Part shown: positions 22,499-64,000 of the stretch, piece by piece
How the letters are laid out: each line of letters opens with the position of its first letter
How positions within the stretch are numbered: position 1 is the stretch's first letter
Assembly: GCF_006345805.1 (NCBI RefSeq)
Contig: NC_043002.1
Coordinates: 9,176,001-9,240,000 of the forward strand
Direction of reading: 5' to 3'
DNA from: Octopus sinensis
Lineage: Eukaryota
Length of the DNA: 64,000 bases
Made by a program: the position numbers and the translations under genes
Notes under the pieces: generated by a model
The model's database searches: none
The model's input: only the letters and a program-made list of their open reading frames with translations
Told to the model about the DNA's origin: nothing

Positions 22499-22558
<60 letters not shown>

Positions 22559-22689
22559 TATGATTTATATAAAATATATGGACAGGGAGAGAGGCCGAAA
22601 GAATGCCTGTGTATGCGTAACTAGATAGGTGTGTAAAATAAAAGTGTATGTATGTCACCGTGTTTTGTATTAATCTCTCTTGATACGTT

Positions 22690-30525: not shown

Positions 30526-30549
30526 TCTCTCTCTCTCTCTATATATATA

Positions 30550-31425
30550 TAGTGAAATTTATATGTCAAAAGAATGTGGCAGTCCTATAAAGGATGATGT
30601 TACTGGTGTTTTAGTCCTAGGAAAACATCTTTTCCAGCTGGTTATCGATACACAGTCTGTGTCCGTATAGCATTTGCAAGGGAGGTCATCACTCCTATCT
30701 CTAGCCTTATGTGATACTCACAGACCCAGGTTTCTGAGTGGTTACCCATCCTCAGTGTGAGAAAACCACAAGCTAGCAGCAAAAGCTCTCTCCACTTGCA
30801 AATATTATATATTCTTTAAGCAATCCACAGTCGCTGATCTCCTACAGAGAAAAACAATTTGTTTAAAACTCAGAACAAGAGATATACACTAAAAGTACTG
30901 AATAGTAAAATTTATATGCCAACAGAATGTTGCAGTCTTATGGAAAACAATGTTACTGTTGTTTTACTCCAGGAAAACATCTTTATAGTACTGCAACATT
31001 CTGTTGGCATATAAACTTTACTATCTGGTACTGTTAGTGTATATCTCTCACTCAGAGATTTAAACAAATAGTTTTTTCTCTACAGGAGATCAGCGACTGT
31101 GGGTTGGTTAAAGAGTATATAGTATTTGGAAGTGGTGGAGAGAGCTTTTGCTGCTAGCTTGTGGTTTTCTCACACTGAGGACGGGTAACCACTCAGAAAC
31201 CTAGATCTGTGAGTATCACGTAAGAGATGGGAGCAATAACCTCCCTTACAAATGCTATACGGACACAAACTGTGTCGACAGCCAGCTGGAAAAGATGTTT
31301 TCCTGAGACTAAAACAACAGTAACATCATCCTTTATAGGACTGTCACATTCTGTTGGCATATAAACTTTACTATTCGGTACTGTTACTGTATATCTCTCA
31401 CTCAGAGATTTCAAACAAGTTGTTT
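30550..31425. repeat. Head-to-head inverted duplication of a roughly 345-bp tandem unit
   Basis: About 1.25 units forward then about 1.25 units reversed; inversion point near 30985. Confidence 0.88.
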
Positions 31426-31437
31426 ATATATATATAT

Positions 31438-31638
31438 ATAATCAAAATAAGCAACAAGGATATCCAAGATAGTGTAGTACAATATTGTTTCATGCTACTT
31501 CATTTTATTAAACACGTGGCTGAAGATTGCTCGACATTTTAAAACTGATGTAATACTTACAGTGTTTAATAAAATGAAGTAGCATGAAACAATTGTACTA
31601 CTCTACCTTGGATGTACTTGTTGCTTATTTTGATTATA
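31438..31638. repeat. Fold-back with about 78-bp arms and a 46-nt spacer
   Basis: taatcaaaataagcaacaag...ttttattaaacac mirrors gtgtttaataaaa...cttgttgcttattttgatta. Confidence 0.88.
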
Positions 31639-32320
31639 ATCACCCCATTTGATTTATATGGATAATACCATACAAAATTCTGGTGCCTTTAACTTAAGTA
31701 CCATATTCATCTGAATCTATCATCATCATCATCATCATTTAGCATCCGCTTTCCATGCTAGCATGGGTTGGACGGTTCAACTGGGGTCTGGGAAGCCAGA
31801 AGGCTGCACCAGGCCCAGTCTGATCTGGCAATGTTTCTACGGCTGGATGCCCTTCCTAACGCCAACCACTCCGTGAGTGTAGTGGGTGCTTTTGCATGCC
31901 ACCGGCACAGGTGCCAGACGAGGCTGGCAAACGGCCACAATCTGATGGGATTCAACTAATCCAATGGTACTCATAAAAAAACCTCCTCAACATATCATTC
32001 TACAAAATGTAGAATACATAGTACAATGCAAAAGAGAATATAAGGAGTGTATAAAATTATATATAATAAGAAATATACTTAGATAAAATTTATTCTACCA
32101 CTGGAAATTCTTATATGACAATTAATTGTTCCACGGCTTAATAAACATTTATTGATATATATATATATGGCGTTAGGAAGGGCATCCAGCCGTAGAAACA
32201 CTGCCAGTTGAACCGTCCAACCCATGCTAGCATGGAAAACGGACGCTAAATGATGATGATGATGATGATGATATACAACCTTTAATATATATATACATAA
32301 TTAATATGTCTGCATTAATA

Positions 32321-36899: not shown

Positions 36900-39555
36900 G
36901 TAAGTGTCTGTGTGTGATGTGTTATAGTGTTAGCATTTGAGGAAGAAGTGGTGAGGGTGATTTGTGGGTATGGTCCACAAAGTGGAAGAGGGATCACTGA
37001 GAAAGAGGTTTTTAAGGGTGTGCATGGGGGAAACGGAATTAGAGAGAGAAATGTTGAAGGAATTATGCTGTTGGAGTTTTGTGATGAGAAAGAGTTGTGT
37101 GTGGCAAACACGTGGTTTAAGAAAACAGAGAAAAGGAAGATGACATTCAGTGCAGGAGGGAATGAGACAGATTGATTTCGTGTTGGTTGGCAGGAAAAAC
37201 AGAAAGTATCTGAGAGATGCGAAGACAATACCAGGGGAGTTGCAGCACAGACTGGTGGTTGCTGATTTGGATAAGAGGAAAGTTTAAAAGTGTGTGAGAG
37301 GGGGAAACAGTTGGGAGGAGAAAGGTGTGCAAACTGAAGGAAGAAGAAACAAGAGCAAGGTTTGAGGAGCTGGTAAGCATTGATGCACCGGATTTGTGGA
37401 AGTCTTTTAAAGAAGGGGTACTAAAGGGATGTGACGAAGTGTGTGGAAGGACGAAAGGTAGGAGAGATCAAGGAGGTGAGGGATGCGATAGTGAGGAAGA
37501 AAGAGGCGTGTAAAGCTTTGTGTAATAATAGGACTGAGGTATAATAACATGAAGAATCATGCAAAGAGGGTGGTTGTGAGATCTATGAAGAAGGAGGCTG
37601 AGGAGAGGTTGAGATAGCTGGATGAGGACCCAGGTAGAGTGTTTAGGTTTATTAAATCAATGGAAAAAGATGGAATAGATGTTGAGGGAGGAAGATGCAT
37701 GAGGGGGAGTGATGGAAGGGTGAATTTTAGTGAGAAGGACAGGGGAGGAGTTTGGAAGGAGCATATGGAGGGAATTATGAATGAGGAAAATGAATGAGAT
37801 CAGAGGGTGGAAGTTGTTGTAGTGGAGGGGTCAGTGGAGAGGGTTAGTCAGGAAGAAGTAGTAGAGGCAATGAAGGAAATGAAAATGGGAAAGGGCAGCT
37901 AGTCCAGCAGAAGTAAATGTGGAAATGATAATTGCAAGTGGAGAGATAGGGATTGTTGTGATGATGGAGCCTTGCCAGGGTGCGGTGGATGGAAGAGGAA
38001 TGCCAGGGGATTGGGCACAAAGTGTTGTGGTACCGATCTTCAAGGGGAAAGGGAGATGTGATGAGTTGTGGGACATATAGGGGAGTGAAGTTATTGGAGC
38101 ATGCAATGAAGATAGTGGAAAGGGTGTTGGAGAGGAAAATTCGGAAAGGGGTGGATGTGGATGAGATGCAATTTGGTTTTATGCCAGGTAGGGGGACAAT
38201 AGATGCAGTGTTCATTGTAAGGAGATTGCAAGAGGAACACCGGGATAAGGAGAAGTTGTACATGTGCTTTGTTGATCTGCAGAAGGCATTTGATAGGGTT
38301 CCAAGGAAGGTGATTGAGTGGGCATTGAGGAAAAGAGGTGTACTAGAGGTAATAGTGAGGGCAGTGATGAGTTTGTATGAGTGGGTAAAGGCAGATGTTA
38401 GAATTGGATCAGAGCTGTTGGAGGAGTTTGTGATGAAAGTTGGTGTGCATCAGGGATCTGTGTTGTTGCCATTGTTGTTTGCAATAGTGGTTGATGTGGT
38501 GATGGAGAGTGCAAGAGAGGGATTGATAATAATGGAGATGCTGTATGTGGATGACCTTGTTCTGATGAGTGAGACGATGAAAGAATAGAGGGAGAAGTTT
38601 TGGAAATGGGAGGGGGCATTTGAAAGCAAGGGTTTGAAGGTAAACCTCTGGAAGACAAAAGTGATGGTGAGCGGGGTGGAAGGAGAAGTGTTAGTGAGTA
38701 AGGTGGACCCATGTGGTGTGTGTGGGAGGAGGGTAATGGCAAATGCGGTGTTGTGTACGAGATGTGAGAAATGGAGTCCCAGAAGATGTACGAAAATGAA
38801 GAAGGTGACCCCAAGACTGGCGACAGAGTTTGATTGTGGAAGATATGAGAAAGAAGCTGGAGGGCTGGCGGAACCAGTGGAAATGTTATGTGACGAGGTG
38901 GAAATGGTGAGAGGGTTTTGTTATTTGGGAGATAGGGTAGATGTAAGTGGTGGGTGTGAAGAAGCTGTGACAGCAAGAGTGAGACTTGGCTGGGAGAAGC
39001 TCAGGGAATGTGGAGTGCTTTTATGTGGGAAAAGGTTCTCATTAAAGATGAAAGGAAGGGTCCATAAGAGTTGTGTGAGAGCTGCAATGCTGTTTGGGAA
39101 TGAGAATGATGTCTGAGGGGGAGAGAGATGGTAATTTTGAGAAGGACTGAAAGAGCAATGGTGAGAGAAATGTGTGGAGGGAAGTTGTTTGATAAGAGGA
39201 GGACTGAGGATTTGATGGGATTGCTGGGGTTGGAGGAATTGGTGGAATGGTTGGTAAGGGTGAATGGAGTGAAGTGGTATGGGTATGTGTTGAGGAGGGA
39301 TGAAGAGCATGTCCTGAGGAAGGTGATTGCATTTGAGGTAAATGGAGTACGAAAGCAAGGTAAACTGAAGAAAATGTAGAGGAGACAGGTGGAGGGAGAG
39401 ACTGGGAGGGTTGGCTTGAAAAAGGAGGACACACAAAACCAGGCAAGATGGTGTGAGGGTAGTAGTTGCTATGGCACTGAGGTTGATCTGGCCACCTCCA
39501 TTAACAGAGACAAAACCCAGATTTAAAACACTGGATTATGATGATGATGATGATG
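36900..39555 (+). mobile_element. Decayed RTE LINE of a second, purine-rich family (endonuclease C-terminus, RT, (GAT)n tail)
   Basis: VICGYGPQSG, NGIRERNVEG, VANTWFKK, EMQFGFMPGRGTIDAVF, GVHQGSVLLPLLF, YVDDL, VKWYGYV; many stops and frameshifts. Confidence 0.92.
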
Positions 39556-41537
39556 ATATATGTGTCATATATGAGAAAGAGAGTAGCTTCAGGTGTAGGT
39601 GTGTAGTTAAGAAGTTTGCTTCCCCACCACACGGATTCAGGTTCAGTTCCACTGCATGGCACCTATGGCAAATCTCTTCTACTATAGTCATGGGCTGACC
39701 AAAGCCTTGTGAATGGGTTTAGTAGCGAGAAACTGAAAACACTCCATTTTACACATATATGCATAGTATCGGAGATACCCGGCATTGCCCATGTTACATG
39801 CAACTGAAGAATTAGACTTTTCTGTTATATTTTCTGAAATGAACTGGAATATCTATGTTTCGAATTTCATCAAAATTGCAGTTGAGGCTTCTTTCCCTCT
39901 GTACACACCCTAAAAAAATTGTAAACGTGTCACATGTATCCCATACTCCTGATTTTTATGCGCATATTCCAAAATTCCAGTCTTATTGAACATGTTAAGA
40001 GGATTTTGTTCCTGAAAAATGGAGGTTATGGAGCTCTAAAATGTGAGAGTTAAGGCCCCTGTTGGTGGTGGGTGTCTTAATGTCAACCAGAGAAGTTGAA
40101 TTCTTGAGAATCTTTTTAACTTGGTTCTTATATCTATTGTTTGAATTTCTTTGAAATAGGAAATATATGTTCACTGGGTTTGTAAAAGAGAGCAAAGCTA
40201 CAGGAAACCAAAAGACGAATGATTACAATAAGCAGTCAGCTACCCTAACCCAGTCGTTACCACTCCCAATGTAGGATTCCTCACCATCCAGGTGACAGGC
40301 ATAAGATGCATTACGAATCTATAGCAATTGGAAGGGTGTGACCCAACTGAAATAAACATTAACAACTGTGTGACGTGAGGGCTAAGGAAAAATGAAAGTG
40401 TCACCTCTGGAGTTTGTAAATGACCACTATACTGATATGTAACTGGACAGAATAAATTTACAATCTATAAATGTCTTTGAATAACCAGTCACTCATCTGG
40501 GAAGGCCTTGAAATCAATGTTACCATCTGTGGACTATGTGTGACTCCGTGATAATAAAAAGATTGAAAGGAGATCTGCAACCAAATAACTTTACTCAATA
40601 CTTTGCAACTGAATCAGTGGAGGCAAAGATGCCTCTCATTTACTTAACAATTTATGCACCACATTGCAGAAATCACAATGCAAGTATATGTCAAAGCAAA
40701 CTCTTACACTGTTGTACCATTGAATTACAAATAATGCTCATCTTTTATGCTCGGGTAACCCTACAGCTTCCAAGAGCACAACTGTATTTGTTTTTGCTTA
40801 GATAAAGTGACAAAATTGTGGGTGTTAAGTCCCCATGGAGGGGTCTTTCTAACTTTGTAAGAAGATGAAATTTTATAAATATTAATTCATTTGTGTCTAA
40901 TAACTATGGTTAAAATTTCATCAACAGCAAAAATATATGAATTGTCATGGGGATTATGGGCCTTATGCATAGAATATAATTTCCAAATTTCGTAAAGATC
41001 CATTCAGTACTTTTGACCTAGTTTTGGATCATAAAAGAAATGACTAAAATTTGAGAGTTAAGGCCCCCATTAGGGTGTCTTATAATCCTCATGTGAAGTG
41101 GAAACTTTGAGAATACTTCTTGATTTGTGTCAATTACCCATGGTTGAAATTTCATCAACATCAAAAATTTATGAATTTTTATGGAGGTTCTGCCCCCTTT
41201 AAGCCATCTGAAATTCAAACCAAACATATTGCATTATACCTGCCCTTATGCATTGAATCTAAGTGTCAAATATCATAAGAATCCATTCAGTAATTTTGGT
41301 CCATGAAATTGTATGAAACACACAGCATTACCCTTCTCCCTACACTTGGATTTTGTGTTCCTAATTCATTATGATCAGTGCAGCAGTTTTCAAATGTGTA
41401 AGTAACACACGAACACACAAAAAGACATTGACTTTGATATAATAGATATGAATATGCACATATACATACATGTATATATATATATATGTGTGTGTGTGTA
41501 TTTGTCTGTGTCTGTGCATGTATGTATGTGTGTGTAT

Positions 41538-41606
<69 letters not shown>

Positions 41607-42415
41607 ATATACATATATATACATACATACATATATATGTGTGTGTGTACATACACACAAAGATAAATTGATAGATACAACTGAGTGGACAAACAAAAAT
41701 ATGAGACACAGCCTAGTGCTTCTTTTTATGTGATTAGCCTGGTACTTACTCCATTAGTATCTTGTGAAACCAGTAAGTTATGGGGATGTAAATAAATGAA
41801 CAGCAGTTGTGAAGCAGGGATGAGGGCGAAACACAGAGATGAAGACACACACATACACTTATAGATTTATATACGATTGAGTTCTTTTAGTTTCTGTCTA
41901 CGAAATGCATATATATATATATGTATACACATATACACAAGATAAATTGATAGATACAACTGAGTGGGCAAACAAAAATATGAGACACTGCCTAGTGCTT
42001 TTTTTTTTATTTTGATAAGCCTGGTACTTATTCTATCAATTTCTTCTTGTGAAACCAGTAAGTTATGGGAATGTAAATAAACGAACACCAGTTGTGAGGC
42101 AGTGATGAGGGAGAAACACAAAGACACACACATAGGCTTACATATATACATACATATACAAACAATTGATTTCTTTCAGTTTCTGTCTACAAAATCCACT
42201 GACAAGGCTTTGGCTAGTCTGAGGCGATAGCAGAAGACACGTGCCAAGTCACCACATAGTGGGACTGAACCCAGGACTATGTGTTTTGGAACCAAGTTTG
42301 TTACCACACAGCCACACCTGCACCTATGTATATGTGTGTGTTTGTGTATGTGTGTATATATGTATGCATGTATATATGTGTACATATTACATGTACATCT
42401 TTATATATATATATA

Positions 42416-42446: not shown

Positions 42447-42650
42447 CTGCCTCTAATGGAATTATCTCCAATATTTCATGAGTATAACCTCACCCACTAA
42501 GATGTCTAGAGAACTCATATGTATTTTAGCTGATGAGTACGGGACACTTTTATCTGCTGCAATTTTTGCTACTTGTAATAAAGCCTGTCTTTGTATGAAA
42601 CAATTGTACTAAAAACTAATCCATTCTTGTTGCTTCTTTCTCGTATATAT

Positions 42651-45600
42651 ATCATCATCATCATCATCATCATCATTTAACGTCCGCTTTCCATGCTAGC
42701 ATGGGTTGGACGGTTCAACTGGGGTCTGGGGAGCCCGAAAGCTGCCCCAGTCCAGTCAGATCTGGCAGTGTTTCTACAGCTGGATGCCCTTCCTAACGCC
42801 AACCACTCCGAGAGTGTAGTGGGTGATTTTATGTGCCACCGACACAGGTGCCAGACGAGGTGGCAGACGGCCACGCTCGGATGGTGTTTTTTATGTGCCA
42901 CCGACACAGGTGCCAGACGAGGCTGGCAGACGGCCACGCTCGGATGGTGTTTTTATGTGCCACCGACACAGGTGCCAGATGAGGCTGGCAAACGGCCACG
43001 ATCGGATGGTGTTTGTTACGTGCCCACAGCACGGAGGCCAGTCGATGCGGTACTGGCTACGGCCACGTTCGGATGGTTTTCTTGTGTGCCACGTGCCACC
43101 GGCACTGGTACCACAAAGATACAAATTCCATTGATGTTCATCTATTTTGATTTGTTTTGATTTTCACTTGCCTCAACAGGTCGGTAAGCACAGGTGGACT
43201 GACTACGTCCCAGGTAAGGCCACGGGTTATGGCCTGACTAGTCTTGCCGGGTCTTTGGATGGTGTTTTTATGTGCCACTGACACAGGTGCCATATGAGGC
43301 TGGCGAACGGCCACGATCGGATGGTGTTTGTTACGTGCCCACAGCACGGAGGCCAGTCGATGCGGTACTGGCTACGGCCACGTTCGGATGGTATTCTTGT
43401 GTGCCACCGGCACTGGTACCACAAAGATACAAATTCCATTAATGTTCATCTATTTTGATTTGTTTTGATTTGATTTGATTTGATTTTGATTTTCACTTGC
43501 CTCAACAGGTCTTCACAAGTGTCACAAGAAGGAAGGTATGCACAGGTGGACTGACTACGTCCCAGGTAGGGGCCACAGGTTATGGCCTGACTAGTCTTGC
43601 CGGGTCTTCGGATGGTGTGTTTATGTGCCACTGACACAGGTGCCAGATGAGGCTGGCGAACGGCCACGATCGGATGGTGTTTGTTACATGCCCACAGCAC
43701 GGAGGCCAGTCGGTGCGGTACTGGCTACGGCCACTTTCGGATGGTTTTCTTGTGTGCCACCGGCACTGGTACCACAAAGATACAAATTCCATTGATGTTC
43801 ATCTATTTTGATTTGTTTTGATTTGATTTTGATTTTCACTTGCCTCAACAGGCCTTCACAAGTATCACAAGAAGGAAGGTATGCACAGGTGGACTGACTA
43901 CGTCCCAGGTAGGTGCCATGGGTTATGGCCTGACTAGTCTTGCCGGGTCTTCGGATGGTGTTTTTATGTGCCACCGACACAGGTGCTAGATGAGGCTGGC
44001 GAACGGCCACGATCGGATGGTGTTTGTTATGTGCCCACAGCACGATGGCCAGTGATGCGGTACTGACTACGGCCACGTTCGGATGGATTCTTGTGTGCCA
44101 CCGGCACTGGTACCACAAAGATACAAATTCCATTGATGTTCATCTATTTTGATTTGTTTTCATTTTCACTTGCCTCAACAGGTCTTCACAAGTGTCACAA
44201 GAAGGAAGGTATGTACAGGTGGACTGACTACGTCCCAGGTAGGGGCCACGGGTTATGACCTGACTAGTCTTGCCGGGTCTTCGGATGGTGTTTTTATGTG
44301 CCACTGACACAGGTGCCATATGAGGCTGGCGAACGGCCACGATCGGATGGTGTTTGTCATGTTCCCACAGCAAGGAGGCCAGTCGATGCAGTACTGGCTA
44401 CGGCCACGTTCGGATGGTTTTCTTGTGTGCCACAGGCACTGGTACCACAAAGATACAAATTCCATTGATGTTCATCTATTTTGATTTGTTTTGATTGATT
44501 TTCACTTGCCTCAGCAGGTCTTCACAAGTGTCACAAGAAGGAAGGTATGCACAGGTGGATCGACTACGTCCCAGGTAGGGGCCACGGGATATGGCCTGAC
44601 TAGTCCTGCCGGGTCCTCTCATGCACAGCACACTTCCATAGGACTCGGTCTTTAGTCATTTCCTTGGTGAGACCTAAAGTTCGAAGGTCGTGCTTCACCA
44701 CCTCGTCCCAGGTTTTCCTGGGTCTACCTCTTCCACAGGTTCCCTCAACTGCTAGGGTGTAGCACTTTTGCACACAACTATCTTCAGCCATTCTCATCAC
44801 ATGACCATACCAGCGCAGCCGTCTCTCTTGCACACCACAACTGACACTTCTTAGGTTCAACTTTTCTCTCAAAGTACTTACACTCTGACGATTATGAACA
44901 CTGACATTACACATCCATCGGAGCATACTGGCTTCATTTCTTGCGAGCTGACGCATATCCTCAGCAGTCACGGCCCATGTTTCACTACCATGTAGCATGG
45001 CTGTACGTACACACGCATCATATAGTCTGCCTTTTACTCTTAGCGAGAGGCCTTTTGTCACCAGCAGGGGTAAGAGCTCTCTAAACTTTGCCCAGGCTAT
45101 TCTTACTCTAGCAGTTACACTTTCAGCACACCCACCCCCGCTACTGACTTGGTCTCCTAGGTAGCGGAAGCTATCAACTACTTCTAGTTTGTCTCCCTGG
45201 AACGTGGTAGAAGTTGGTCTCTGCACATTTCCAGTGTTTATTGCTCCTGAGCATCTGCCACAGACAAAAACTATTTTCTTAGTTAGCCTTCCTTTGACAT
45301 TGCTGCACCTCTTATGTGTCCATAGCTTACACTTGGTGCACCTTATAGAGTTTCTACCTACACCTTTTTTACAGATCGAGCAGGGCCATCTACCTGAAGT
45401 CGTTTGTGATTGGTCCACCTTCCTACTTATTAGGACTTTGGTTTTGGCTAGGTTGATTCTAAGGCCCTTCGATTCTAATCCTTGTTTCCACACCTGAAAC
45501 TTCTCCTCCAGTTCTGATAGTGACTCAGCAATTAGAGCAAGGTCATCAGCATAGAGGAGCTCCCAGGGGCATCCTGTCTTGAATTCCTCCGTTATTGCCT

Positions 45601-51929: not shown

Positions 51930-52007
51930 ATGTCCACTGCCAACCAGATTAAAGGGATTTTCTTCTGTGAATTCCATCCGACCCAAGGACCAATCATAGC
52001 TTATCAG
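51930..52007 (+). CDS. NPRL2: NPRL2 (GATOR1 complex subunit) coding exon 1
   Basis: ATG at 51930 gives MSTANQIKGIFFCEFHPTQGPIIAYQ, then donor CAG|gttggt. Matches the NPRL2 N-terminal motif IFFxEFHPTxGPxIxYQ. Confidence 0.96.
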
Positions 52008-52497
52008 GTTGGTAAGATTAAAATGCTACATTTTTATACTCAATGAATAAATTTAGAAAAGAATGGAAGCTTGCTCCAAGTATTCCATTTAAGATCCTTT
52101 AAAATCGATCCTAAATATTTTTCTTCCGTTTTTTCTTTTTTTTATCTTATGGAATTATGTGATGTGCGAACTCTGGCCGTCGAATATTGATTTCTATCAG
52201 AGGCACAAGGTATAGGTACCGTAGCCGCCTCAAGATGGGGAAACTGTTACGCCCATGCCTTTCTTGGAACTAGTAGCGATGAAAAGGAAGTGAAATTGCT
52301 ACTTAAAGGGAAGTTTAGCCCCAAGTCAGCTCTGATTGAACACATGATGAAAAACGGTTCGGCTAGGATCATCCCATCTTTTTCTTTTTATATATTAAAG
52401 ACGACTTAATTCAGTGTATCTTCCCTTTGAACGAGATGAGGCTGCTATTTCTAGCAGTTCGAATGATCGCATATAAGCTCCTTCATTTATATATATG

Positions 52498-53984: not shown

Positions 53985-56150
53985 GTAATTAATAGCGACA
54001 GAAGTATCAATACCAAAAGGTAATCTTGTTCTCCAACTTAATATGGAGGCTGTGGTAGGAGCCTAGTGGCAGGTATTTAAAGGGGAAAATTTGACAAGTC
54101 AGTGCTGGAGCCTAGCAGCAGGTATTTAAAGGGAAAGATATGACAAGTTAGTCAGTCACTGGCTGACACTCGCTGACGATACATTGAAGAGGCCAGGGAA
54201 CAGAAGAAAGAAGACATGCACCCAACACCAGAGCTGAACACACCTCCAAGGGGGGGGGGGGGCACATCAAAACGGTCAAGGAGTAGGGGCCGAAACCAGA
54301 CGTAGTTCCTCCTGATGATGTCTTGAGCTAACTGGATCCTATAAAGGAGCTGTTGTGGTAGCAGACCACGAAACACGGTTGTAATTCCTCAGAATACTGC
54401 ATTATTTACCTTCGGAGGACTTATCATAAGGATTTGTGGTGCATAAAAGCTCTTGTAATTATATTGTTGACAGACAACAATCATTTGCTATGGCCACCAG
54501 AACTGTCAGATCACAGGATTTCACCTTTCTAGGGGTTCTTCCATAACAGATGTTCTGCAGCACAATAACAACTGAATCTCTATCATTTATGTATAGAGGG
54601 AAATAAGATGCGACAGGATGCATAGAACCTTGGTGTCTATTCAGGAACTGGTGTCACAAATAGCTCATTAAGAAATAATAGTGACGGAAGCAGTGTTAAT
54701 ACCTAAAGGTAACCTTGATCTCTACCTTAACATGAAGGTTGTGACAGGATCTCTTATAAGGACCTGGGGTGCATAAAAACACTCATAAAATGTGCCGGTG
54801 GCAGGTAAAAAGCACCAACCGATCATGGCCGTTTGCCAGCCTCATTTGGCACGTAAAAAGCACCCGCTATACTCACTGAGTGGTTGGCATTAGGAAGGGC
54901 ATCCAGCTGTAGAAACACTGCCAGATCAGACTGGAGCCTGGTGCAGCCTCCTGGCTTTCCAGACCCCGATCGAACTGTCCAACCCATGCTAGCATGGAAA
55001 ACGGACGTTAAACGATGATGATGACAGACAAGAATTATTAGCAATGACCACCAGAACTGCCAGATCACATGATTTCACTCTGCTACAGGCTCCTCAATGA
55101 CAGATATCTAGCTGCATGATAACAATATATAGAATATCAGTGTCTATTCATGCACTGGTGTTGCAAATAGCCAGTGGGCTTATTAATAATAATTAATAGC
55201 GATAGAAGTTGTTTTAATACCAAAAGGTAATCTTGCTCTCCAACTTAACACAGAGGGTGTGTCAGAACACAGAATGCTGCTTTACCTTGAGAGGACCTCG
55301 TGGTACATAAGAACACTTGTAATTATATCATTGATGCACCACCAGTGGCTGAATAGACATTGAGAGTCTATATATTGTTGATGGCAGATTCGATGACTGG
55401 CATCCGTACTAGCGGGGTGCCAAGAACACCATCCAAGCGTGATCATTGACTGAGCGGCTAACCAGCTTCCGTGCCAGTGGTACATAAAAGGCACCATTCG
55501 AGTGTGATCATTACCAGCTTTGGCTTACTGGATCTTGTGCCCCGTGCTAGTAGGGTGCTAAGAGCACCATCCAAGCGTGATCATTGCCAGAGCAGCCAAC
55601 TGGCCTCCGTGCCGGTGGCACATAAAAGGGCACCATTCAAGCGTGATTGTTACCAATGTCGCCTTACTGGCACCTGGGCTGGTGGCACGTGTAAAAATAT
55701 TTGAGTGAGGTCATTGCCAGTACTGCCTGACTGACTCTGTGCCAGTGGCACATAAAAAGCACCCACTACACTCTCAGAGTGGTTGGTGTTAGAAAGGGCA
55801 TTCATCTGTAGAAACTCTGCCAAATCAAGATTGGAGCCTGATGCAGCCATCTGGTTTGCCAGCCCTCAGTCAAAATCGTCCAACTCATGCTAGCATGGAA
55901 AGCGGACGTTAAACGATGATGATGATGTGCTGCTGGGCATCTATCACTGAGGAACCCATAGCAGGGTGAAAGCACATGTTCTGGCAATTCTGATGGCTGT
56001 AGCAGATGATTCTCATCTGCCAATGATATAATTATGAGTGTTTTTATGCACCATGAGTGCTTATGAAAGATTCTCTCAAGGTAAATAGCACAATATTCTA
56101 AATTCTAACATAACTCCATATTCAGTTAGAGATCAAGATTACCCAGGAGA
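53985..56150. repeat. Old degenerate tandem repeat (roughly 370-400-bp unit) in NPRL2 intron 1, last unit inverted
   Basis: taatagcga.agaag...atacc.aaaggtaatcttg.tctc.aacttaa recurs at about 53990, 54677, 55190 and as reverse complement at about 56100-56145; interrupted by repeat X and family R. Confidence 0.7.
54050..54390 (+). mobile_element. Unclassified repeat X, copy 3 (NPRL2 intron 1)
   Basis: Same body and right end; internal duplication of the ggagcctag..caggtatttaaaggg..tgacaagt segment. Confidence 0.8.
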
Positions 56151-56521: not shown

Positions 56522-56809
56522 CTGCACTACATTTTTGTAAAAATTGGCATTGTTCATTTGATTAACATTTACTCAACAAATGGGTAAGAACCCTTTATAC
56601 ATTTTTGATTGACCTACTCAATGTATCGTTGAAAACACCCTCAACCAATCTTTCAAGTATTTTCTAAATCTGAGGGGACATGTTCTAAATCATGAGAAAT
56701 CATTCCATAGCTAGATATGCAAAATTGGATATTTTGTTCATGATTCTACTAAATTGGAGTTGACCATTCTTAACCAAAGATAACAACTTATTTCTTGTTT
56801 TTATTTCAG

Positions 56810-56901
56810 ATACCAGAAGATCTGATTAAAAAAGAAACTTTTGATGCTCTTCATATTTACATCATTCCTAAAAAAGAGTTATTTGAGCGTGATATTACAG
56901 T
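56810..56901 (+). CDS. NPRL2: NPRL2 coding exon 2 (92 nt)
   Basis: Acceptor ttttatttcag|, IPEDLIKKETFDALHIYIIPKKELFERDIT(V), donor |gtgagt. Resembles [24 protein letters not shown] of vertebrate NPRL2. Confidence 0.95.
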
Positions 56902-58582
56902 GTGAGTAATTATGGTCTCTCATTTCAAATTGATTTACTAATTGTTCGTTGCTTTTAATGATACAGGTTCTGAAGTTTGAAGTATCTACTACATGAGTTC
57001 AAATTTCACCACAGTTTACTACTGAAAAAAAAACTCAATTATTGTTTGCTTACAATAATTTTTTGGCTTTTTTACAGTAAAGAGGTTACGAGTAAAAAGG
57101 ACATCCAACTGTAAAAACATATATCCAAAGCACCAACCGATCATGGCCGCTGGCACCTGTGCCGGTGGCACGTAAAAAGCAACCACTATACTCATGGAGT
57201 GGTTGGAGTTAGGAAGGGCATCCAGCTGTAGAAACACTGCCAGATCAGACTGGAGACTGGTGCAGCCTTCTGGCTTCCCAGACCCCGGTTGAACCATCCA
57301 ACCCGTGTTAACACGGAAAACGAACGTTAAACAATGATGATGATGATGATTTCATAATGACACTGAAAATTGGATGTGAAACAGTAAAAGAAAATTGATG
57401 TGAATCTTATCAACTTTTCCTCAGACATTGTATTGAAGATATAAGCATTACTTGTTATTCTTGTCTATCTAACTAGAAAGATTAGTCTCTCACAGTTAAA
57501 CTTCTAGACAAATATACATATTTTCTGGCTCATCAAACTAAAATAAACACAACTTCCCTACATTCGGAGCACTGCATCCTTCAAAACTTCCATGCTTCCT
57601 GAGATTCGCCAACACTACACCTGATTTTCTCCCCTCCATACACACGCAAGCATGTATCTGACTCATACACTGTTCGCTTCCCAGACATTTCTACATTACT
57701 GCATATTCTTTATATGCACTTTCTGACAAGTTGTGGTGCACCTGAGCACCGTATACAATAATTTCATTATTATTATTATTTTTAAACTTCCATCAAACTC
57801 AGTGATTGGCATCTGTTGCTAGTGGAGCACTAAGAGTACCATACGAGTGAGATCGTTGCCAGAACAACAAGCTGGCCTTCATGCCGATGGCACGTTAAAC
57901 ACACCATTTGAGCGTGATCGTTACCGTGTCACCTCACTAACACTTGTGCTGGTGGCACATGAAACATTCGAGCGAGGTCGTCGCCAGTGCCGCTGGACTG
58001 GCTCCTGTGCAGGTGGCACATAAAAAGCACCATTTGGGCGTGGCTGTTGCCAGTACCACCAAACTGGCCCTCATGCTGGTGGCACACCCACTACACTCTC
58101 AGAGTGGTTGGCCACCAAACTGGCCCTCGTGCCAGTTCGGTGGTACTGGCAACAGCCATGCCCAAATGGTGCTTTTTACATGCCACCTGCACAGGAGCTA
58201 ATCCAGCGGCACTGGTGACGACCTCCCTTGAATGTTTCACATGCCACCAGCACAAGTGCTAGTAAGGTGACGCCAATATTTGTTTTTTTTTTCAATGCAT
58301 TTATGTAAAATCGGGTAACATTCCCATATGATTTCATATTAATTCCTGACTGCTAAGTGAAGTGAGGCATGTAGAATTAAGTCTAGTGGTTAGTCCAAAG
58401 TCATATCATTTCACCATTTTACTTCTACACATCTATGCTATTTGCATTCAATCTTATCATGATTTTTATTTAGCTATCCAACATTCTTGTTCAAATTTTT
58501 TTTTCCCCCAAATTTTTTCAATTGTTTTTTTTTTCACCCAGCTTTTATTTTTAACAATATTTTTCGTATTTTATATTTTCAG

Positions 58583-58751
58583 AAATGCACTTGGCCATAA
58601 AATCCTTGGTTACCCTGTTCACATTGATAGTCCTAAATATGCCCGCAATGCCCTTATATTCAACCTGTGCTTTGTTTTTGACCAACAAACATGTACAACA
58701 GACTATGAACCTGTGGTTAAGAAACTTTCTGCTTACTTGACTCAGTTAGAG
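58583..58751 (+). CDS. NPRL2: NPRL2 coding exon 3 (169 nt)
   Basis: Acceptor tattttcag|, NALGHKILGYPVHIDSPKYARNALIFNLCFVFDQQTCTTDYEPVVKKLSAYLTQLE, donor |gtagtg. Contains the diagnostic KYxRNALxFNL and EPxVKKLxxYLxxLE motifs; phase matches exon 2. Confidence 0.97.
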
Positions 58752-60670
58752 GTAGTGTATTAAATACTACATTCCATTATTAATATTTCTTTAAGCTTTT
58801 AAAAATTTTGTTTTTATCTAAATATTTTATGATTACCTATTTCTTTACTACCCACAAGGGGTTAAACACAGAGGGGACAAACAAGAACAGACAGACGGAT
58901 TAAGTCGATTACATCGACCCCAGTGCGTCACTGGTACTTATTTAATTGACCCCGAAAGGATGAAAGGCAAAGTCGACGTCGGCAGAATTTGAACTCAGAA
59001 TGTAGCAGCAGACGAAATACAGCTAAGCATTTCGCCCAGCGTGCTTACGATTCTGCCAGCTCGCCGCCTTATCTTTTAACACCTATCTATACTGGCATAG
59101 GTTGAATGGTTTGACAGAATCTGATATGTCGGAGGACTGTATCATGCTCCAAAATCTGCTTCGGCCTGGTTTTCTACAACTGGATGCCTTTCCTAATGTC
59201 AGCTACTTTACAGTGTGTACTGGATGCTTTTTTAATCTTTTTCCATGGCACCAGCACTAGCGAGTTCATGCCACTTGCAAAACTAAGATCCCTTAAGTGG
59301 AGCTACGATAGAGACAGAGATGGTTTTATGCTAGGTGATGAGAGGTCAGGATAGATTTCTTACTGTAGAAAAGCTACATGGCTACTCACATTTTATACCT
59401 AGGTGAGAATTTATTATTATGGATGATGGGTATAAGAATCGGTGCTAGGTTTGACATAATAACTGTTCAAGAAAATTTGTACCGTGTGCCCAAGTTAGAA
59501 ATCATCTATATTATTCTACTTGTCCCAGCCTTAATTATTGAACAAAATCAAAGACATAATCAAAATCTTTAGCATAATAAAGCAAAGTTATGAAGATTTA
59601 TAAACTTAAGCCTCAAAATAAGAACATTTATAAAACATGGAATTTCCATAGATCCTGCTAGACTATCATCATCATCATCTCTAGGATTAACTTCATTACT
59701 GGATATTTTTTAATGCCTGATATGAGAATAAATGTTGTGTATGAAAGCTTATAACCATCTTAACCATCAATTTGAAGTAATTATGACATGAATAGATTCT
59801 ACAACGTTCGGTAGCATTGTATGCTATGCCTTATCAGTTTTAAATAGTAGAACTTTAACAGTGGTAATCTTTGATTGTCATAGAGACTGAATGAAAAAGT
59901 TTGTCTGGATAGCAGTTTCACAATTTCTTTATATTAAAACGTAATAATTAATGCACAAGTGTCAACTTTGTATGATGGCCAAATATATAAATATCACTAT
60001 AATGTGAAGGAATTTTCGTTTAAGTTTCTTCTTGTTTTTTTTTTATTTGGTGGGGTGGGGTTAATTTTTTAATATTTGTAATAAGAACTAAGGGAATATC
60101 ATATCACATTTTAAGTTCAGGTCCATTGCAGATGTTTTGTTAATTAGCACCTGTGTAGACATTCCATCTTTTTCTATAACTAGGATTGCATTATCCAACA
60201 TATCTTACCTTTTTTAAGACTGATAGATGTGATTTGAGAATTCAGTTTTTATTTCTAATCAAGGGACTTTCTGCTTCTTGACTGTATACCAATTCTATAT
60301 TGTCTCAGTTTTGCAAATTTTTGGCAATACTTAACAGACCTTTTGAGAAAGGCTCAAAGGAATTGATCATCCATTGATACATACCTCTGTATACAAAGAA
60401 CCAATTGATTACTTGACCTGCTAGAAAAAGCAACCAAATTTCACTTTCTCTTTTGAATTATATAGACTGTTTTGGGTGTCTTTTTTAATTATGTTAATTA
60501 TTGTTCTGATTGTAACTTCTATTTAATTTAATTATTTTGTTTTAAAGCTAACTGGTGATTACTTATCAGATCGAATCATAGCAACTGTTGACTATTTTAA
60601 AATTTATTCAGTTATTTATTTGATTTTCTAATTAATGAGTATAAATCTAATTTAATTTCTTTATATACAG

Positions 60671-60779
60671 CTTGAGAGCGGTTATTTATCAAATGAAGAA
60701 TCCAGAAAAGAAATACCAAAATTAATGCAAGATGTCCTCCAAGCTTTAAATACACACGGAATGTGCCATGTGCCAATGA
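60671..60779 (+). CDS. NPRL2: NPRL2 coding exon 4 (109 nt)
   Basis: Acceptor ttatatacag|, LESGYLSNEESRKEIPKLMQDVLQALNTHGMCHVPM, donor A|gtaagt. Phase-compatible with exons 3 and 5. Confidence 0.95.
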
Positions 60780-61059
60780 GTAAGTGAGAAACTAGTTTGT
60801 AAGTTCAAGTCTTCTGCAGGTATTTAACTATGTGATCTTAGTTCATGTTCCTCTCAAGAATAAGTATCATATTACCTATTGGACTTTTAGATTTCACTCA
60901 AAGGATATTGGAATAATACATATATATACCATTATGCCTATAAAACAGATTTATGAACTCAATAACCATACATATCTTACATCTATTTTCTTTCCTCCAC
61001 CTCACTCTCTATTTGTATCACATCGAAACTAACTATGACTTAATTTTTCCTCTCACACC

Positions 61060-61114
61060 GTCTCCGATGAAGGGATATTATTATTAATTAATATTCTAGA
61101 AACAGCTGTAAGAC
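61060..61114 (+). ncRNA. Minimal type I hammerhead ribozyme motif (U4C variant), Penelope-type
   Basis: Stem I GTCT/AGAC; core CCGATGA; stem II GGGATATT/AATATTCT; GAAA; palindromic stem III ACAGCTGT; GUA cleavage triplet. Confidence 0.6.
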
Positions 61115-61214
61115 CTTCTATCTATAAATGCTCTAATATCTATACAGCCCTTGGTCTTTTTATCTCATTACGCAAAAAATTCATATATCATATTACCTAG
61201 GAATATTACTTATT

Positions 61215-61673
61215 GTAGACTGACATCTTGCCCAAGGAGAGACTTATCTCTCATCCAATTCTACTATATGGCTCAGAAACCTGGACATTATCAAAGAAGC
61301 TTGAGAGGCAGTTGGATGGAACTTACACTCGCCTCCTTATGAGAGCTCAAAATCTCTCGTGGAAGCGTCATCCAACCAAAGTACAAATATATGGGAAATT
61401 ACCACCTGTGTCATCTCTTGTAGAAGGTAGGAGAGTCCAGTTTGCTGGACATTGTTGTAGAGCTGAGAACGAGGTAATTTCTACTCTTCTCCTCTGGAAG
61501 CCATCTACTCGCAATACCAGAGGGTGCACACTCTCCTACCCTGATGTAATCTCCAGGGATTCAGGCATCCAGCAACAGGACCTCCGTAATGCCCTGATGG
61601 ACCGTGAAGTCTGGCGTAGCATAGTAAATTCCATTGTCTCGACCACAGTCAAACAATGATGATGATGATGATT
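61215..61673 (+). mobile_element. 5'-truncated RTE LINE 3' fragment (third family)
   Basis: ILLYGSETWTL, RRVQFAGHC, DREVWR motifs and a (GAT)n tail. Confidence 0.9.
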
Positions 61674-63350
61674 TCTCATCCGTTGCACACTCTGGAACCA
61701 GAGCTAAGAATCAGCTCCCAAACATAAGGGTCTCTGATCATAGACTTGCTCAATCAAGGCTGACTCGGTGCTAAACAACTGTAACAACCAAAAGGACCTT
61801 CCTAACTTAGAAGACATTTACTTTGTTATGGATACACTAATACACAGGTTGAGTGTTTATCACACACACACGTTAATGCATTGTTTGGCTTTTCAGAATT
61901 AACAGCAACCATTCTTCAGTGTTCGGTGCTAACAATTTCAGGGACTGAAGAAATATGAGTTATGACTTTCATGGTTTGCTCAAATGTATTAATCACAAAT
62001 TGAAATAGTTACAATGAGAATCAAACCTTTCATTCACCAGGAGCTCGCAGTTATTCTGCACTGCACTGCCTACCACCTCCAATATATAAGTGTAAATAAT
62101 AAGTCAAATCCATCTCTCAGATTTTATTTTCTAGTAATATGAAATCAAAATCAAAACCAAAATCAATTCAATGACTGGCATCCGTGCTAGTGGAGTGCAA
62201 AGAGCACCATACAAGTGTGATCGTTGACAGAGCAGCTAACCAGCTTCCGTGCCAGTGGCACATAAAAGGGCACCATTCGAGTATGGTTGTTACCAGCGTC
62301 GCCTTAGTGGCACTTGTGCCCATGCTAGTAGGGTGCCAAGAGCACCATCCATGCGTGATCATTGCCAGAGCAGCCAACTGGCTTCCATACCTGTGGCACA
62401 TAAAAGGGCACCATTCGAGCGTGATCGTTACCAACATTGCTTCACTGGCACGTGTAAAAAGGTTCAAGCGAGGTCGTTGCCAGTACCACCTGACTGGCCC
62501 CCATACTGGTGGCACGTAAAAAGCATCCACTAGACTCTCGGAGTGGTTGGCATTAGGAAGGGCATCCAGCTGTAGAAACTCTGCCAGATCAAGATTGGAG
62601 CCTAGTGCGGCCGTCTGGTTTGCCAGTCCTCAGTCAAAATCATCGAACCCATGCTAGCATGGAAGGCAGACGTTAAACGATGATGATGATGATGATGATG
62701 ATGAAGTGTCTAGTTTGAGGGATATTTGACTTCCATTTCCAGCAGGTTGAGAACCATATAGAGTTTCCTCCATTAGCTCTTTTCATTTGCTTGTTTACTC
62801 AAGTTATTAAAAGTAGTTTTCAGAGCTGTTGTGAAGATAAGTTGCATGGTCAAAATTTCAAATCTTACTACAGATAACTCTGTTTATTCTAGTTTTCCAA
62901 ACATAGAACAGGTTCTGCCTCTAATTCATAGCCACATAGTTACTATTAGTAAAAACTATTCATCTCTAAAACAATTACTTTCATGAAATTCACTCCAGTC
63001 ATATAATCATGAGCAAATGGATGTAACAGCATGGACAACAAACGTTGACCCTTTAGCATTTAAACTGGCCATATCCAACCAAAAGTATTCTGCCTGTTTT
63101 ATGTTCAAACTGGCCAGATCTGGTCTCTCACACCAACCCTACAATGTTGTTTTAAAAATTAACAGCTACCTCATCAAAATCTCATAGCTACAAGATTAAT
63201 GCCCGATTAGTTCAAAACAATGTGGATAAAAAAGGATTAATTTTCGCAGAATAATGTGAACACCAAAGGATTAAATGATGATGATTATGATGAATAATGA
63301 TGAGTTTGGTTACTTTTTTTTTAATGTATGTTTTTTTTATATCATTCTAG

Positions 63351-63481
63351 GCAAATCAACCACAATACATTTGAAAGTCACATCCCGGATTACAATGCCT
63401 CCCGCAGTTGCTGATCATGATGTGCCTATTTTGGTCAAAGACTCTGGTTCAATTTCTGAATGGGATCTTACTACAAAACAG
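63351..63481 (+). CDS. NPRL2: NPRL2 coding exon 5 (131 nt); gene continues beyond window
   Basis: Acceptor atcattctag|, (S)KSTTIHLKVTSRITMPPAVADHDVPILVKDSGSISEWDLTTKQ, donor CAG|gtgagg. Contains TIHLKV, DVP and WDLTTxQ motifs. Confidence 0.96.
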
Positions 63482-64000
63482 GTGAGGTTGCGCCAGTAAT
63501 CTGTTTAACCCTTTAGCGTTCAGATTATTTTTTCAGATAAACATCAATGGAATTTGTAGTTTGGTGGTACCAGTGCCGGTGGCACATAAGAAAACCATCC
63601 GAACGTGGCCGTAGCCAGTACCGCATCGACTAGCCTCCGTGCTGGTGGCACATAACAAACACCATCCGATAGTGGCCGTGCCAGCCTCACCTGGCCTCCG
63701 TGCCGGTGGCACGTAAAAAACACCATCCAAGCATGGCCGTTCGCCAGCCTCGTCTGGCACCTGTGTCCGTGGCACATAAAAAGCACCCACTACACTCACA
63801 GAGTGGTTGGTGTTAGGAAGGGCATCCAGCTGTAGAAACACTGCCAGATCTGACTGGCCTGGTGCAGCCTCCATGGCTTCCAGACCCCAGTTGAACCGTC
63901 CAACCCATGCTAGCATGGAAAGCGGACGTTAAACGATGATGATGATGATGAATATTCATTTATTTACACCATTTTCAATTAATCCTGCATTATTTTGTAG

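What the first reader, a model, noticed from the sequence alone, without database searches (positions are those of the whole stretch)
60865..61199. Textbook minimal hammerhead in NPRL2 intron 4, sense to the pre-mRNA, with a U4C core change
Seen: all three stems and the core are present at 61060-61114 (predicted cut after A61110), in a roughly 310-bp segment bracketed by a 14-bp direct repeat TATCATATTACCTA (60865 and 61186), 280 nt after exon 4. Known: PLE minimal hammerheads have a palindromic stem III and act as dimers; U4 is a conserved core base. Inferred: an inserted ribozyme that would cut NPRL2 pre-mRNA was neutralised by the U4C change, or it remains a weak or trans-activatable cleavage site.
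Basis: partly seen in the sequence, partly recalled or inferred. Interest (0 to 1): 0.7.

Follow-up and report, generated by a model that had tools for sequence, protein, structure and literature searches.

The report
Decayed hammerhead relic in octopus intron
A roughly 307-bp mobile-element insertion in intron 4 of the Octopus bimaculoides NPRL2 gene carries a damaged copy of the small "minimal hammerhead" self-cutting RNA motif typical of Penelope-like retroelements; it is an ordinary transposon relic, and nothing shows that it cuts or regulates the gene.

Summary
At 61060-61114 (+) there is a type-I hammerhead layout: helix I GUCU/AGAC, core box CCGAUGA (U4C), a 9-bp helix II, GAAA, the palindrome CAGCUG, then UA with the predicted cut after 61110. 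It lies in a 307-bp, 30% GC segment flanked by a perfect 14-bp direct repeat. That segment sits 281 nt into intron 4 of Octopus bimaculoides NPRL2, on the sense strand.

"Textbook" overstates it. Positions 10.1/11.1 are an A·A mismatch instead of the conserved G-C, so the core has two defects.

Core plus minimal stems alone is at chance level, about 0.5 hits per window. The added long helix II and palindromic helix III are expected about 0.001-0.004 times per window. The window also holds four perfect-core hammerhead motifs against about 0.015-0.05 expected, some in Penelope-like inverted arrangements.

The best reading is a solo, 5'-truncated Penelope-like or retrozyme-type insertion whose minimal hammerhead is decayed.

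Published single minimal hammerheads of this type show no detectable cleavage. No dimer partner exists in the visible pre-mRNA. An intact-core motif sits sense-oriented in intron 1 of the same gene.

The family consensus could not be tested because no octopus DNA was reachable.

The parts
60865..60878 (.). Left copy of the 14-bp direct repeat TATCATATTACCTA (putative target-site duplication)
   Evidence: (D2, 100% identity)
60879..61185 (+). 307-bp inserted segment, 30% GC, no other copy in the window. Read as a solo 5'-truncated Penelope-like or retrozyme-type element with the hammerhead motif 75 nt from its 3' end.
   Evidence: No tRNA-like head. No (ATG)n tail, unlike the window's SINE and LINE copies.
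61060..61063 (+). Helix I, 5' strand (GUCU)
61064..61070 (+). Core box CCGAUGA; the consensus is CUGAUGA, so position 4 is C61065 instead of U
61071..61098 (+). Helix II hairpin: an A61071·A61098 mismatch at 10.1/11.1, then 9 bp (61072-61080 with 61089-61097; G·U, G-C, G·U, then six A-U pairs) and an 8-nt loop
   Evidence: It partly overlaps an AT-rich period-10 repeat at 61077-61095.
61099..61102 (+). Core box GAAA (G12 A13 A14 A15.1)
61103..61108 (+). Palindromic helix III and loop 3, CAGCUG. With A15.1 and U16.1 it forms the self-complementary 8-mer ACAGCUGU.
61109..61110 (+). U16.1 and A17; the predicted scissile bond is between 61110 and 61111
   Evidence: prediction from the motif only; no cleavage data
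61111..61114 (+). Helix I, 3' strand (AGAC)
61186..61199 (.). Right copy of the 14-bp direct repeat
60671..60779 (+). NPRL2 exon 4 (context); intron 4 is 60780-63350, GT...AG
61228..61673 (+). Neighbouring, separate 5'-truncated LINE fragment: a reverse-transcriptase C-terminal ORF ending in an (ATG)n tail. Context only, not part of the element.

Best explanation
The 307-bp segment at 60879-61185 is a solo retroelement insertion of the hammerhead-bearing kind. It is either the 3' end of a heavily 5'-truncated Penelope-like element or a single unit of a non-LTR retrozyme. It entered intron 4 of Octopus bimaculoides NPRL2 and duplicated 14 bp of target.

It carries, in the element's sense orientation and 75 nt from its 3' end, a minimal type-I hammerhead of the Penelope-like-element type. 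That type has a short helix I, a long helix II, and a palindromic helix III that can only be completed by pairing with a second copy.

In the element's life cycle such motifs are thought to process multimeric element transcripts. That is inferred from the literature and not shown here.

This copy is most likely catalytically dead, for three reasons:
- U4 of the CUGA turn is C.
- The G10.1-C11.1 pair is replaced by A·A followed by G·U.
- It is a lone copy with no dimer partner.

The defects are most simply explained by neutral decay or by a defective source copy.

Shown here: the anatomy, the repeat, the gene context, and the excess over chance. Inferred: the insertion mechanism, the element class, and the inactivity.
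For: **Anatomy and flanking repeat:**

**Agreement with published hallmarks of minimal hammerheads in metazoan Penelope-like elements (PMC4209133):**
- type I topology
- helix I of 4-5 bp (here 4)
- helix II longer than usual (here 9 bp)
- palindromic 15.2-16.2 and loop 3 (here CAGCUG)

**Agreement with published non-LTR retrozyme features (PMC7229834; bioRxiv 10.64898/2026.07.22.740005):**
- unit of about 300 bp (here 307 bp)
- low GC (here 30%)
- target-site duplications longer than 4 bp (here 14 bp)
- monomer copies common, and about 44% of Xenopus copies intronic

**Agreement with Penelope-like element structure (PMC8557442):** insertions are heavily 5'-truncated and the hammerhead lies near the 3' end.

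**Excess over chance:**
- The combination of a long helix II and a palindromic helix III is expected about 0.001-0.004 times per window.
- The window has four perfect-core motifs against 0.015 per decoy.
- GAAACANNTGTA occurs 4 times against 0.25 expected.
- Dual opposite-strand motifs sit on the arms of an inverted duplication at 30549-31374, the arrangement described for Penelope-like elements.

**Dimer fold:** the in-silico homodimer gives the double-hammerhead fold at -27.3 kcal/mol.

**Inactivity:**
- A single minimal hammerhead from S. mansoni showed no detectable cleavage.
- Single mutations in the CUGA turn gave low activity (PMC9901934).
- There is no second ACAGCTGT in the window.
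Against: - No other copy of the 307-bp segment is in the window and none could be fetched from elsewhere. Family membership, the family consensus at position 4, and the link to a Penelope-like reverse transcriptase / GIY-YIG ORF are all untested.
- Among the ORFs scanned against Pfam, the only reverse-transcriptase match is generic RVT_1 and no GIY-YIG domain was seen.
- Two hallmark features are not met: the core U4 and the G10.1-C11.1 pair.
- Helix II is made from AT-rich low-complexity sequence, a kind of sequence that forms hairpins easily.
- Core plus minimal stems alone is at chance level.
- No Rfam hammerhead model matches.
- The strand of the inserted element is not independently established.
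- The second direct-repeat copy lies only about 15-30 nt from a truncated LINE fragment. The history of the site may be more complex than one clean insertion.
Confidence: 0.68

Rival explanations
1. Chance look-alike. An AT-rich hairpin happens to lie between a near-match to CUGAUGA and a GAAA-palindrome-UA string, inside an insertion of some unrelated kind. There is no descent from any ribozyme.
For: - Hits with <=1 core mismatch and a free 10.1/11.1 pair occur about 0.45-0.58 times per window by chance.
- The motif needs two departures from the core consensus.
- Helix II overlaps a low-complexity AT repeat.
- The monomer hammerhead fold is not the minimum free energy fold, and the region's folding z-score is about 0.
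- No Rfam hammerhead match.
- No family copies are available to show conservation.
- A first-stage reader scanning many windows will meet rare chance hits.
Against: - The joint occurrence of a >=7-bp helix II and a perfectly palindromic helix III appeared once in 719 decoy scans of the real sequence.
- The window is demonstrably enriched in hammerhead motifs carrying the same GAAACANNUGUA signature.
- The motif sits inside a repeat-flanked insert of retrozyme-like size and GC content.
Confidence: 0.18
2. Selected neutralisation. The element arrived with an active ribozyme that cut NPRL2 pre-mRNA, and the U4C change was fixed because it removed that harm.
For: - The motif is sense to the pre-mRNA.
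- U4 lies in the CUGA turn, where single mutations gave low activity.
- Non-LTR retrozymes are depleted from introns relative to intergenic DNA in Xenopus.
Against: - A single minimal hammerhead of this type showed no detectable self-cleavage even with an intact core, so a solo copy exerts little or no harm to select against.
- The second defect at 10.1/11.1 fits general decay.
- The perfect 14/14 repeat bounds divergence only loosely, so one or two hits among about 15 critical positions need no selection.
- A perfect-core motif persists sense-oriented in intron 1 of the same gene.
- About 44% of Xenopus retrozyme copies are intronic.
Confidence: 0.05
3. Live, conditional ribozyme. The motif remains a weak or trans-activated cleavage site in NPRL2 pre-mRNA, completed by pairing its ACAGCUGU with a second hammerhead RNA of the same family. 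This would be loosely analogous to the conserved intronic hammerheads of amniotes.
For: - The homodimer folds in silico into a complete double hammerhead.
- Conserved sense-intronic hammerheads exist in amniote genes such as RECK and DTNB (PMC6155905).
Against: - Two core-adjacent defects.
- No partner sequence in the 12 kb of NPRL2 visible here.
- Even intact minimal hammerhead dimers cleave poorly in vitro.
- No conservation data.
- The segment looks like a lineage-specific transposon insertion.
Confidence: 0.03

Closest known systems
Minimal hammerheads (min-HHRs) in the flanking repeats (pLTRs) of metazoan Penelope-like elements (Cervera & de la Peña 2014, PMC4209133)
   Same: - Type I topology.
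- Short helix I (4 bp).
- Long helix II (9 bp).
- Palindromic helix III and loop 3 that gives an extended helix III only in a dimer.
- Mostly found as single, dispersed, heterogeneous copies thought to come from truncated elements.
- An extra nucleotide follows A9.
   Different: - U4 is C.
- The conserved G10.1-C11.1 pair is absent (A·A, then G·U), with an extra A also on the 3' side of helix II.
- No Penelope-like ORF or second flanking repeat is nearby.
- No family alignment is available to show covariation.
Non-LTR retrozymes of animals (Cervera & de la Peña 2020, PMC7229834; Li et al. 2026 preprint, 10.64898/2026.07.22.740005)
   Same: - Unit of about 300 bp.
- GC below 45%.
- Type I hammerhead.
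- Target-site duplication longer than 4 bp.
- Monomer derivatives are common and often intronic.
   Different: - Only one unit is present, not a tandem array.
- The hammerhead is defective.
- circRNA expression is unknown.
- These retrozymes usually carry canonical type I hammerheads with loop-loop contacts rather than the minimal form.
Conserved intronic hammerheads of amniotes (HH9/HH10 in RECK, DTNB and others; reviewed in PMC6155905)
   Same: A hammerhead motif in an intron, sense to the host pre-mRNA, probably of retroelement origin.
   Different: - The amniote motifs have intact cores and stable helices, and are ultraconserved across species.
- This motif has a damaged core and lies in what looks like a lineage-specific insertion. 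No conservation could be tested.
Schistosoma Sm-alpha SINE-like elements with hammerheads (Ferbeyre et al. 1998; cited in PMC4209133)
   Same: A short (about 330 bp), dispersed, non-autonomous retroelement carrying one type I hammerhead with a labile helix III.
   Different: - Sm-alpha hammerheads have an intact core, a 6-bp helix I, and loop-loop tertiary contacts, and they are active.
- There is no sequence similarity to this motif, and Rfam Hammerhead_1 does not match it.

Membership tests
Hammerhead ribozyme (general) | Conserved core: C3 U4 G5 A6 N7 G8 A9, G12 A13 A14, A15.1-U16.1, H17 | tested here: not met
   12 of 13 positions fit; position 4 is C61065. Single mutations in the CUGA turn gave low activity (PMC9901934).
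Hammerhead ribozyme (general) | Three helices radiating from the core | tested here: met
   - Helix I is 4 bp and helix II is 9 bp.
- Helix III is 2 bp as a monomer or 8 bp in a homodimer.
- The monomer fold is -5.7 kcal/mol against a minimum free energy of -6.8.
Hammerhead ribozyme (general) | Site-specific self-cleavage 3' of H17 | not testable with these tools
   No RNA or biochemical data are available.
Hammerhead ribozyme (general) | Match to a curated Rfam hammerhead covariance model | tested here: not met
   No hit at the gathering threshold, nor at E<=10 in 701-nt or 101-nt searches. This test is weak, because a perfect-core motif at 30717-30761 is also missed.
Minimal hammerhead (min-HHR) of Penelope-like elements | Type I topology with short helix I (4-5 bp) and long helix II (6-8 bp or more) | tested here: met
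   Helix I is 4 bp and helix II is 9 bp. Criteria from PMC4209133.
Minimal hammerhead (min-HHR) of Penelope-like elements | Palindromic 15.2-16.2 and loop 3, allowing a dimeric extended helix III | tested here: met
   CAGCUG is a perfect palindrome, and the dimer fold forms an 8-bp helix III.
Minimal hammerhead (min-HHR) of Penelope-like elements | Highly conserved G10.1-C11.1 pair | tested here: not met
   A61071·A61098 sits next to the core, and the first pair is G61072·U61097.
Minimal hammerhead (min-HHR) of Penelope-like elements | One unpaired nucleotide between A9 and 10.1 | tested here: inconclusive
   A61071 occupies that place, but it is mirrored by an extra A61098 before G12, which the consensus lacks.
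Minimal hammerhead (min-HHR) of Penelope-like elements | Belongs to a genomic consensus family with covariation; some members lie in the flanking repeats (pLTRs) next to a reverse transcriptase / GIY-YIG ORF | not testable with these tools
   No other copy in the window. No octopus DNA in the reachable collections. Among the ORFs scanned against Pfam, the only reverse-transcriptase match is generic RVT_1 and no GIY-YIG domain was seen.
Non-LTR retrozyme | Unit of about 170-400 bp, low GC, flanked by a target-site duplication longer than 4 bp | tested here: met
   307 bp, 30% GC, 14-bp perfect repeat. Criteria from PMC7229834.
Non-LTR retrozyme | Tandem head-to-tail copies (two or more hammerheads) able to release a unit RNA that circularises | tested here: not met
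   Single unit and single motif; no tandem array at the site. It would count at most as a 'monomer derivative'.
Conserved intronic hammerheads of amniotes (HH9/HH10) | Intact core and cross-species conservation at an orthologous intronic site | tested here: not met
   The core is defective and there is no Rfam HH9/HH10 match. Conservation could not be tested.

The most novel reading that the evidence does not exclude
The U4C, A·A-closed minimal hammerhead is not dead. It would be a conditionally active, sense-intronic cleavage module in NPRL2 pre-mRNA (NPRL2 is a GATOR1 / nutrient-sensing gene). It would be switched on only when abundant RNAs of the same element family supply the second half of a double hammerhead through the ACAGCUGU palindrome. 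That would be a transposon-RNA-dependent control of a host transcript in a cephalopod.
Probability: 0.03. Interest if true: 0.6.

Novelty: new member of a known kind. Interest (0 to 1): 0.2.

Why it matters
As it stands, it matters little. It is one more degenerate copy of a class of transposon-borne minimal hammerheads that are known to occur by the thousands in invertebrate and lower-vertebrate genomes, often in introns.

Two things are modestly useful:
- This stretch of the Octopus bimaculoides genome is rich in Penelope-like-element-style hammerhead motifs that Rfam models do not detect. Cephalopod hammerhead counts based on Rfam, such as the 235 Hammerhead_1 hits reported for the giant squid (PMC6962438), are therefore probably underestimates.
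It needs the whole genome, not this one locus.

Tried and rejected
**Searches that found nothing**
- Rfam scans: the whole window at the gathering threshold, and E<=10 scans of 60700-61400, 61035-61135, 30300-32000 and 30700-30785. There was no hammerhead hit anywhere, including at perfect-core motifs, so Rfam is uninformative for this motif class.
- Other copies of the 335-bp segment in the window, by blastn with word size 7: none.
- Family copies outside the window:
  - exact-product look-up of the neighbouring ORF and of the UniRef NPRL2 fragment P0001: not on record
  - six-frame translation of the 307-bp insert as one protein query: 3,282 word candidates, none with E<=10
  - gapped DNA pattern against metagenome contigs: 0
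- I conclude that octopus genomic DNA is not in the reachable collections. The third protein search was not spent.
- tRNA-like SINE head in the insert: none.
- Pfam on the neighbouring 143-aa ORF: no family. By eye it is the C-terminal part of a LINE reverse transcriptase ('LLYGSETW').

**Ideas considered and rejected**
- The 14-bp repeat as the target-site duplication of the adjacent LINE fragment. Both copies lie 5' of the LINE, and nothing similar follows its (ATG)n tail at 61673.
- Motifs 42530 and 31520 as closely homologous elements. A MAFFT alignment gives 68% identity, but blastn supports only a shared 17-mer. By eye there is also a nearby shared 10-mer. I treat them as the same motif family, not as well-aligned copies.
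- The perfect-core motif at 55947 as strong support. Its two sister copies in the window have broken cores and its helix III is weak. It is used only as a counter-example to 'sense-intronic copies must be neutralised'.

Full report
**1. What is in the sequence**

- GUCU (61060-61063) can pair with AGAC (61111-61114).
- The core box is CCGAUGA (61064-70). It matches CUGANGA except for C at position 4.
- A hairpin follows at 61071-61098.
- Then come GAAA (61099-61102), the palindrome CAGCUG (61103-08), and U61109-A61110. The predicted scissile bond follows A61110.
- The 14-bp direct repeat TATCATATTACCTA at 60865 and 61186 is exact. It is the only perfect repeat in the 1.2 kb around the site. 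It brackets 307 bp of 30% GC, against 39% for the window and the intron.

**2. Gene context**

- A tblastn with human NPRL2, recalled from memory and used only as a probe, finds five exons on the + strand. They lie at 51930-52010, about 56790-56902, 58587-58754, 60671-60779 and 63351-63484.
- The joined exons are 100% identical to UniRef A0A0L8FQ07 of Octopus bimaculoides, Pfam PF06218.
- Intron 4 is 60780-63350, GT...AG.
- The motif starts 281 nt into it, sense to the pre-mRNA.

**3.

- The two bases flanking the core in helix II, A61071 and A61098, cannot pair. The helix begins only with G61072·U61097.
- The G10.1-C11.1 pair is called highly conserved in both canonical and Penelope-like-element minimal hammerheads (PMC4209133). 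It is therefore absent here.
- In the alternative register, with A61071 as the known bulged base after A9, helix II does not form.
- The motif thus has two defects at or next to the core.
- The monomer does not adopt the hammerhead fold as its minimum free energy structure (-5.7 against -6.8 kcal/mol). Only helix II is predicted.
- The folding energy of the region is indistinguishable from shuffles (z about 0).

**4. Is it more than chance?**

I wrote a type-I descriptor with these settings:
- helix I >=4 bp and helix II >=4 bp
- helix III of at least one inner pair
- G·U pairs allowed
- <=1 core mismatch
- 10.1/11.1 free

Results:

| Test | Hits per window |
|---|---|
| 100 dinucleotide shuffles, any hit | 0.58 |
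| 719 permuted decoy cores on the real sequence, any hit | 0.45 |
| Decoys, helix II >=9 bp | 0.0028 |
| Decoys, perfectly palindromic helix III | 0.0014 |
| Decoys, palindromic helix III and helix II >=7 bp | 0.0014 (one case) |

- On core and minimal stems alone the candidate is unremarkable.
- CTGANGA is about 2.5 times commoner than the mean decoy, so these rates rise to about 0.004.
- Of the 19 'GAAA + 4/6/8-nt palindrome + UH' sites in the window, only three have an upstream core box with a helix I of >=4 bp: 31586, 42597 and the candidate.
- The real core gives four perfect-core hits in the window: 30755(-), 31520(+), 42530(+) and 55947(+). The expectation is 0.015 per decoy and 0-0.01 in shuffles.
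- GAAACANNTGTA occurs 4 times against 0.25 expected.

This genome region clearly carries a population of hammerhead motifs, and the candidate shares their signature. I put the probability that it descends from a real hammerhead at about 0.8.

**5. What kind of hammerhead, and what kind of insert**

PMC4209133 describes minimal hammerheads in the flanking repeats (pLTRs) of metazoan Penelope-like elements:
- type I topology
- helix I of 4-5 bp
- helix II of 6-8 bp
- a base between A9 and 10.1
- G10.1-C11.1
- palindromic 15.2-16.2 and loop 3
- action as dimers
- mostly dispersed single copies from truncated elements

The candidate meets the topology, helix-length and palindrome criteria. RNAcofold of two copies gives exactly the double hammerhead, with an 8-bp ACAGCUGU helix III and swapped helix I strands, at -27.3 kcal/mol.

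Other published features also fit:
- Penelope-like insertions are heavily 5'-truncated, carry the hammerhead near the 3' end, and often have an adjacent inverted truncated copy (PMC8557442).
- Animal non-LTR retrozymes are low-GC units of about 300 bp with target-site duplications longer than 4 bp (PMC7229834). They are reported to derive from the flanking repeats of Penelope-like elements. Monomer copies are common, and about 44% of Xenopus copies are intronic (preprint 10.64898/2026.07.22.740005).

The 307-bp, 30% GC, 14-bp-flanked insert with the motif 75 nt from its 3' end fits either description. It has no tRNA-like head. It also lacks the (ATG)n/(GAT)n tail that ends the window's SINE and LINE copies, so it is unlikely to be a passenger of that LINE.

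Elsewhere in the window, an inverted duplication at 30549-31374 carries a hammerhead motif on each arm, on opposite strands about 400 bp apart. A second palindrome at 31437-31638 contains another. These are the arrangements described for Penelope-like elements. Cephalopods are reported to harbour such elements and Rfam-detectable hammerheads (PMC8557442; PMC6962438).

**6. How it most likely works, or fails to**

In the element's life cycle the motif is thought to cut multimeric element RNA. This comes from the literature and is not shown here.

At this locus it is a solo copy:
- A single minimal hammerhead from S. mansoni showed no detectable cleavage, and dimers cleaved only weakly.
- Single mutations in the CUGA turn gave low activity in comprehensive mutagenesis (PMC9901934).
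- The closing G-C pair is missing.
- No second ACAGCTGT occurs in the window, which includes the first 12 kb of NPRL2.

I therefore consider it an inert relic.

The perfect 14/14 repeat bounds post-insertion divergence only loosely. One or two hits among about 15 critical positions are therefore compatible with neutral decay or with a defective source copy.

As a small counter-example, a perfect-core motif lies sense-oriented in NPRL2 intron 1 at 55947-55990. It has a weak helix III, and its two sister copies have broken cores.

**7. What could not be done**

None is in the window, and the reachable collections hold no octopus genomic DNA:
- exact look-ups failed
- a six-frame protein query of the insert found nothing
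- a gapped pattern scan of metagenome contigs found nothing

Rfam is blind to this motif class here. It misses even the compact perfect-core motif at 30717-30761 in an 86-nt search.

**8. Verdict**

- The functional part, neutralised by selection or still trans-activatable, is unsupported.
- It is a new, degenerate member of a known kind and of low interest by itself.

Noticed in passing
window 30549-31374 (motifs at about 30717-30761 on the - strand and about 31162-31206 on the + strand): An inverted duplication of about 410 bp per arm, 85-96% complementary.
- It carries a compact perfect-core hammerhead motif on one arm: CUCACA-CUGAGGA-UGGGU/ACUCA-GAAA-CCUGGG-UC-UGUGAG.
- The other arm carries a twin with two changes.
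- The two motifs lie on opposite strands about 400 bp apart, and the structure is flanked by (TA)n.
- This resembles the inverted 5'-truncated copies described for Penelope-like elements.
- Rfam does not detect it.
   Followed up: partly
window 31437-31638 (motif 31516-31601, + strand) and 42524-42614 (+ strand): Two perfect-core type-I hammerhead motifs with about 60 nt between the core boxes and a palindromic helix III (CAAUUG).
- They share the 17-mer ATGAAACAATTGTACTA, and CTTGTTGCTT about 20 nt after the predicted cut.
- The first lies inside a long, nearly perfect hairpin with 32-nt arms that are 100% complementary. That hairpin also draws spurious Rfam microRNA-precursor matches.
   Followed up: partly
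window 55928-56100 (+), 54391-54564 (-), 55022-55116 (-): A repeat of up to 175 bp, in three copies, each directly following the (GAT)n tail of a SINE copy.
- The 55947-55990 copy has a perfect hammerhead core and a 6-bp helix I. It is sense-oriented in NPRL2 intron 1.
- The other two copies have UGGAAGA and UUGAGGA in place of CUGANGA.
- It is unclear whether this is a decaying hammerhead family or a near-miss by chance.
   Followed up: partly
window 27437-27532 (- strand): Another hammerhead-like arrangement: CUGACGA, about 70 nt, then CAUGAAACAGGUGUA.
- Helix I has only 3 bp.
- Helix III is one base away from the candidate's CAGCUG palindrome.
   Followed up: no
window, many sites (for example 42644-43000, 31705-31949, 62168-62706, 63533-63959, 4324-4829, 55500-55927): At least 15 copies of a SINE-like repeat of about 350 bp, ending in a (GAT)n microsatellite.
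- Some copies contain an internal duplication of about 138 bp (62185-62433).
- The truncated LINE fragment at 61228-61673 ends in the same kind of (ATG)n tail, which suggests a SINE-LINE partnership.
   Followed up: partly
window 37980-39116 (+), 44600-45493 (-), 29325-29672 (-): Fragments of non-LTR retrotransposon ORF2: Pfam RVT_1 at 37980-38588, and a PHD/zinc-finger-like C-terminal region at 44600-45493. They belong to a different LINE family from the fragment next to the finding.
   Followed up: partly
window 19214-19760, 20474-21240, 22350-22740, 41287-41710: Long compound microsatellites and low-complexity tracts of the (TA)n, (CA)n and (TATC)n-like kinds. They generate long spurious ORFs.
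   Followed up: no
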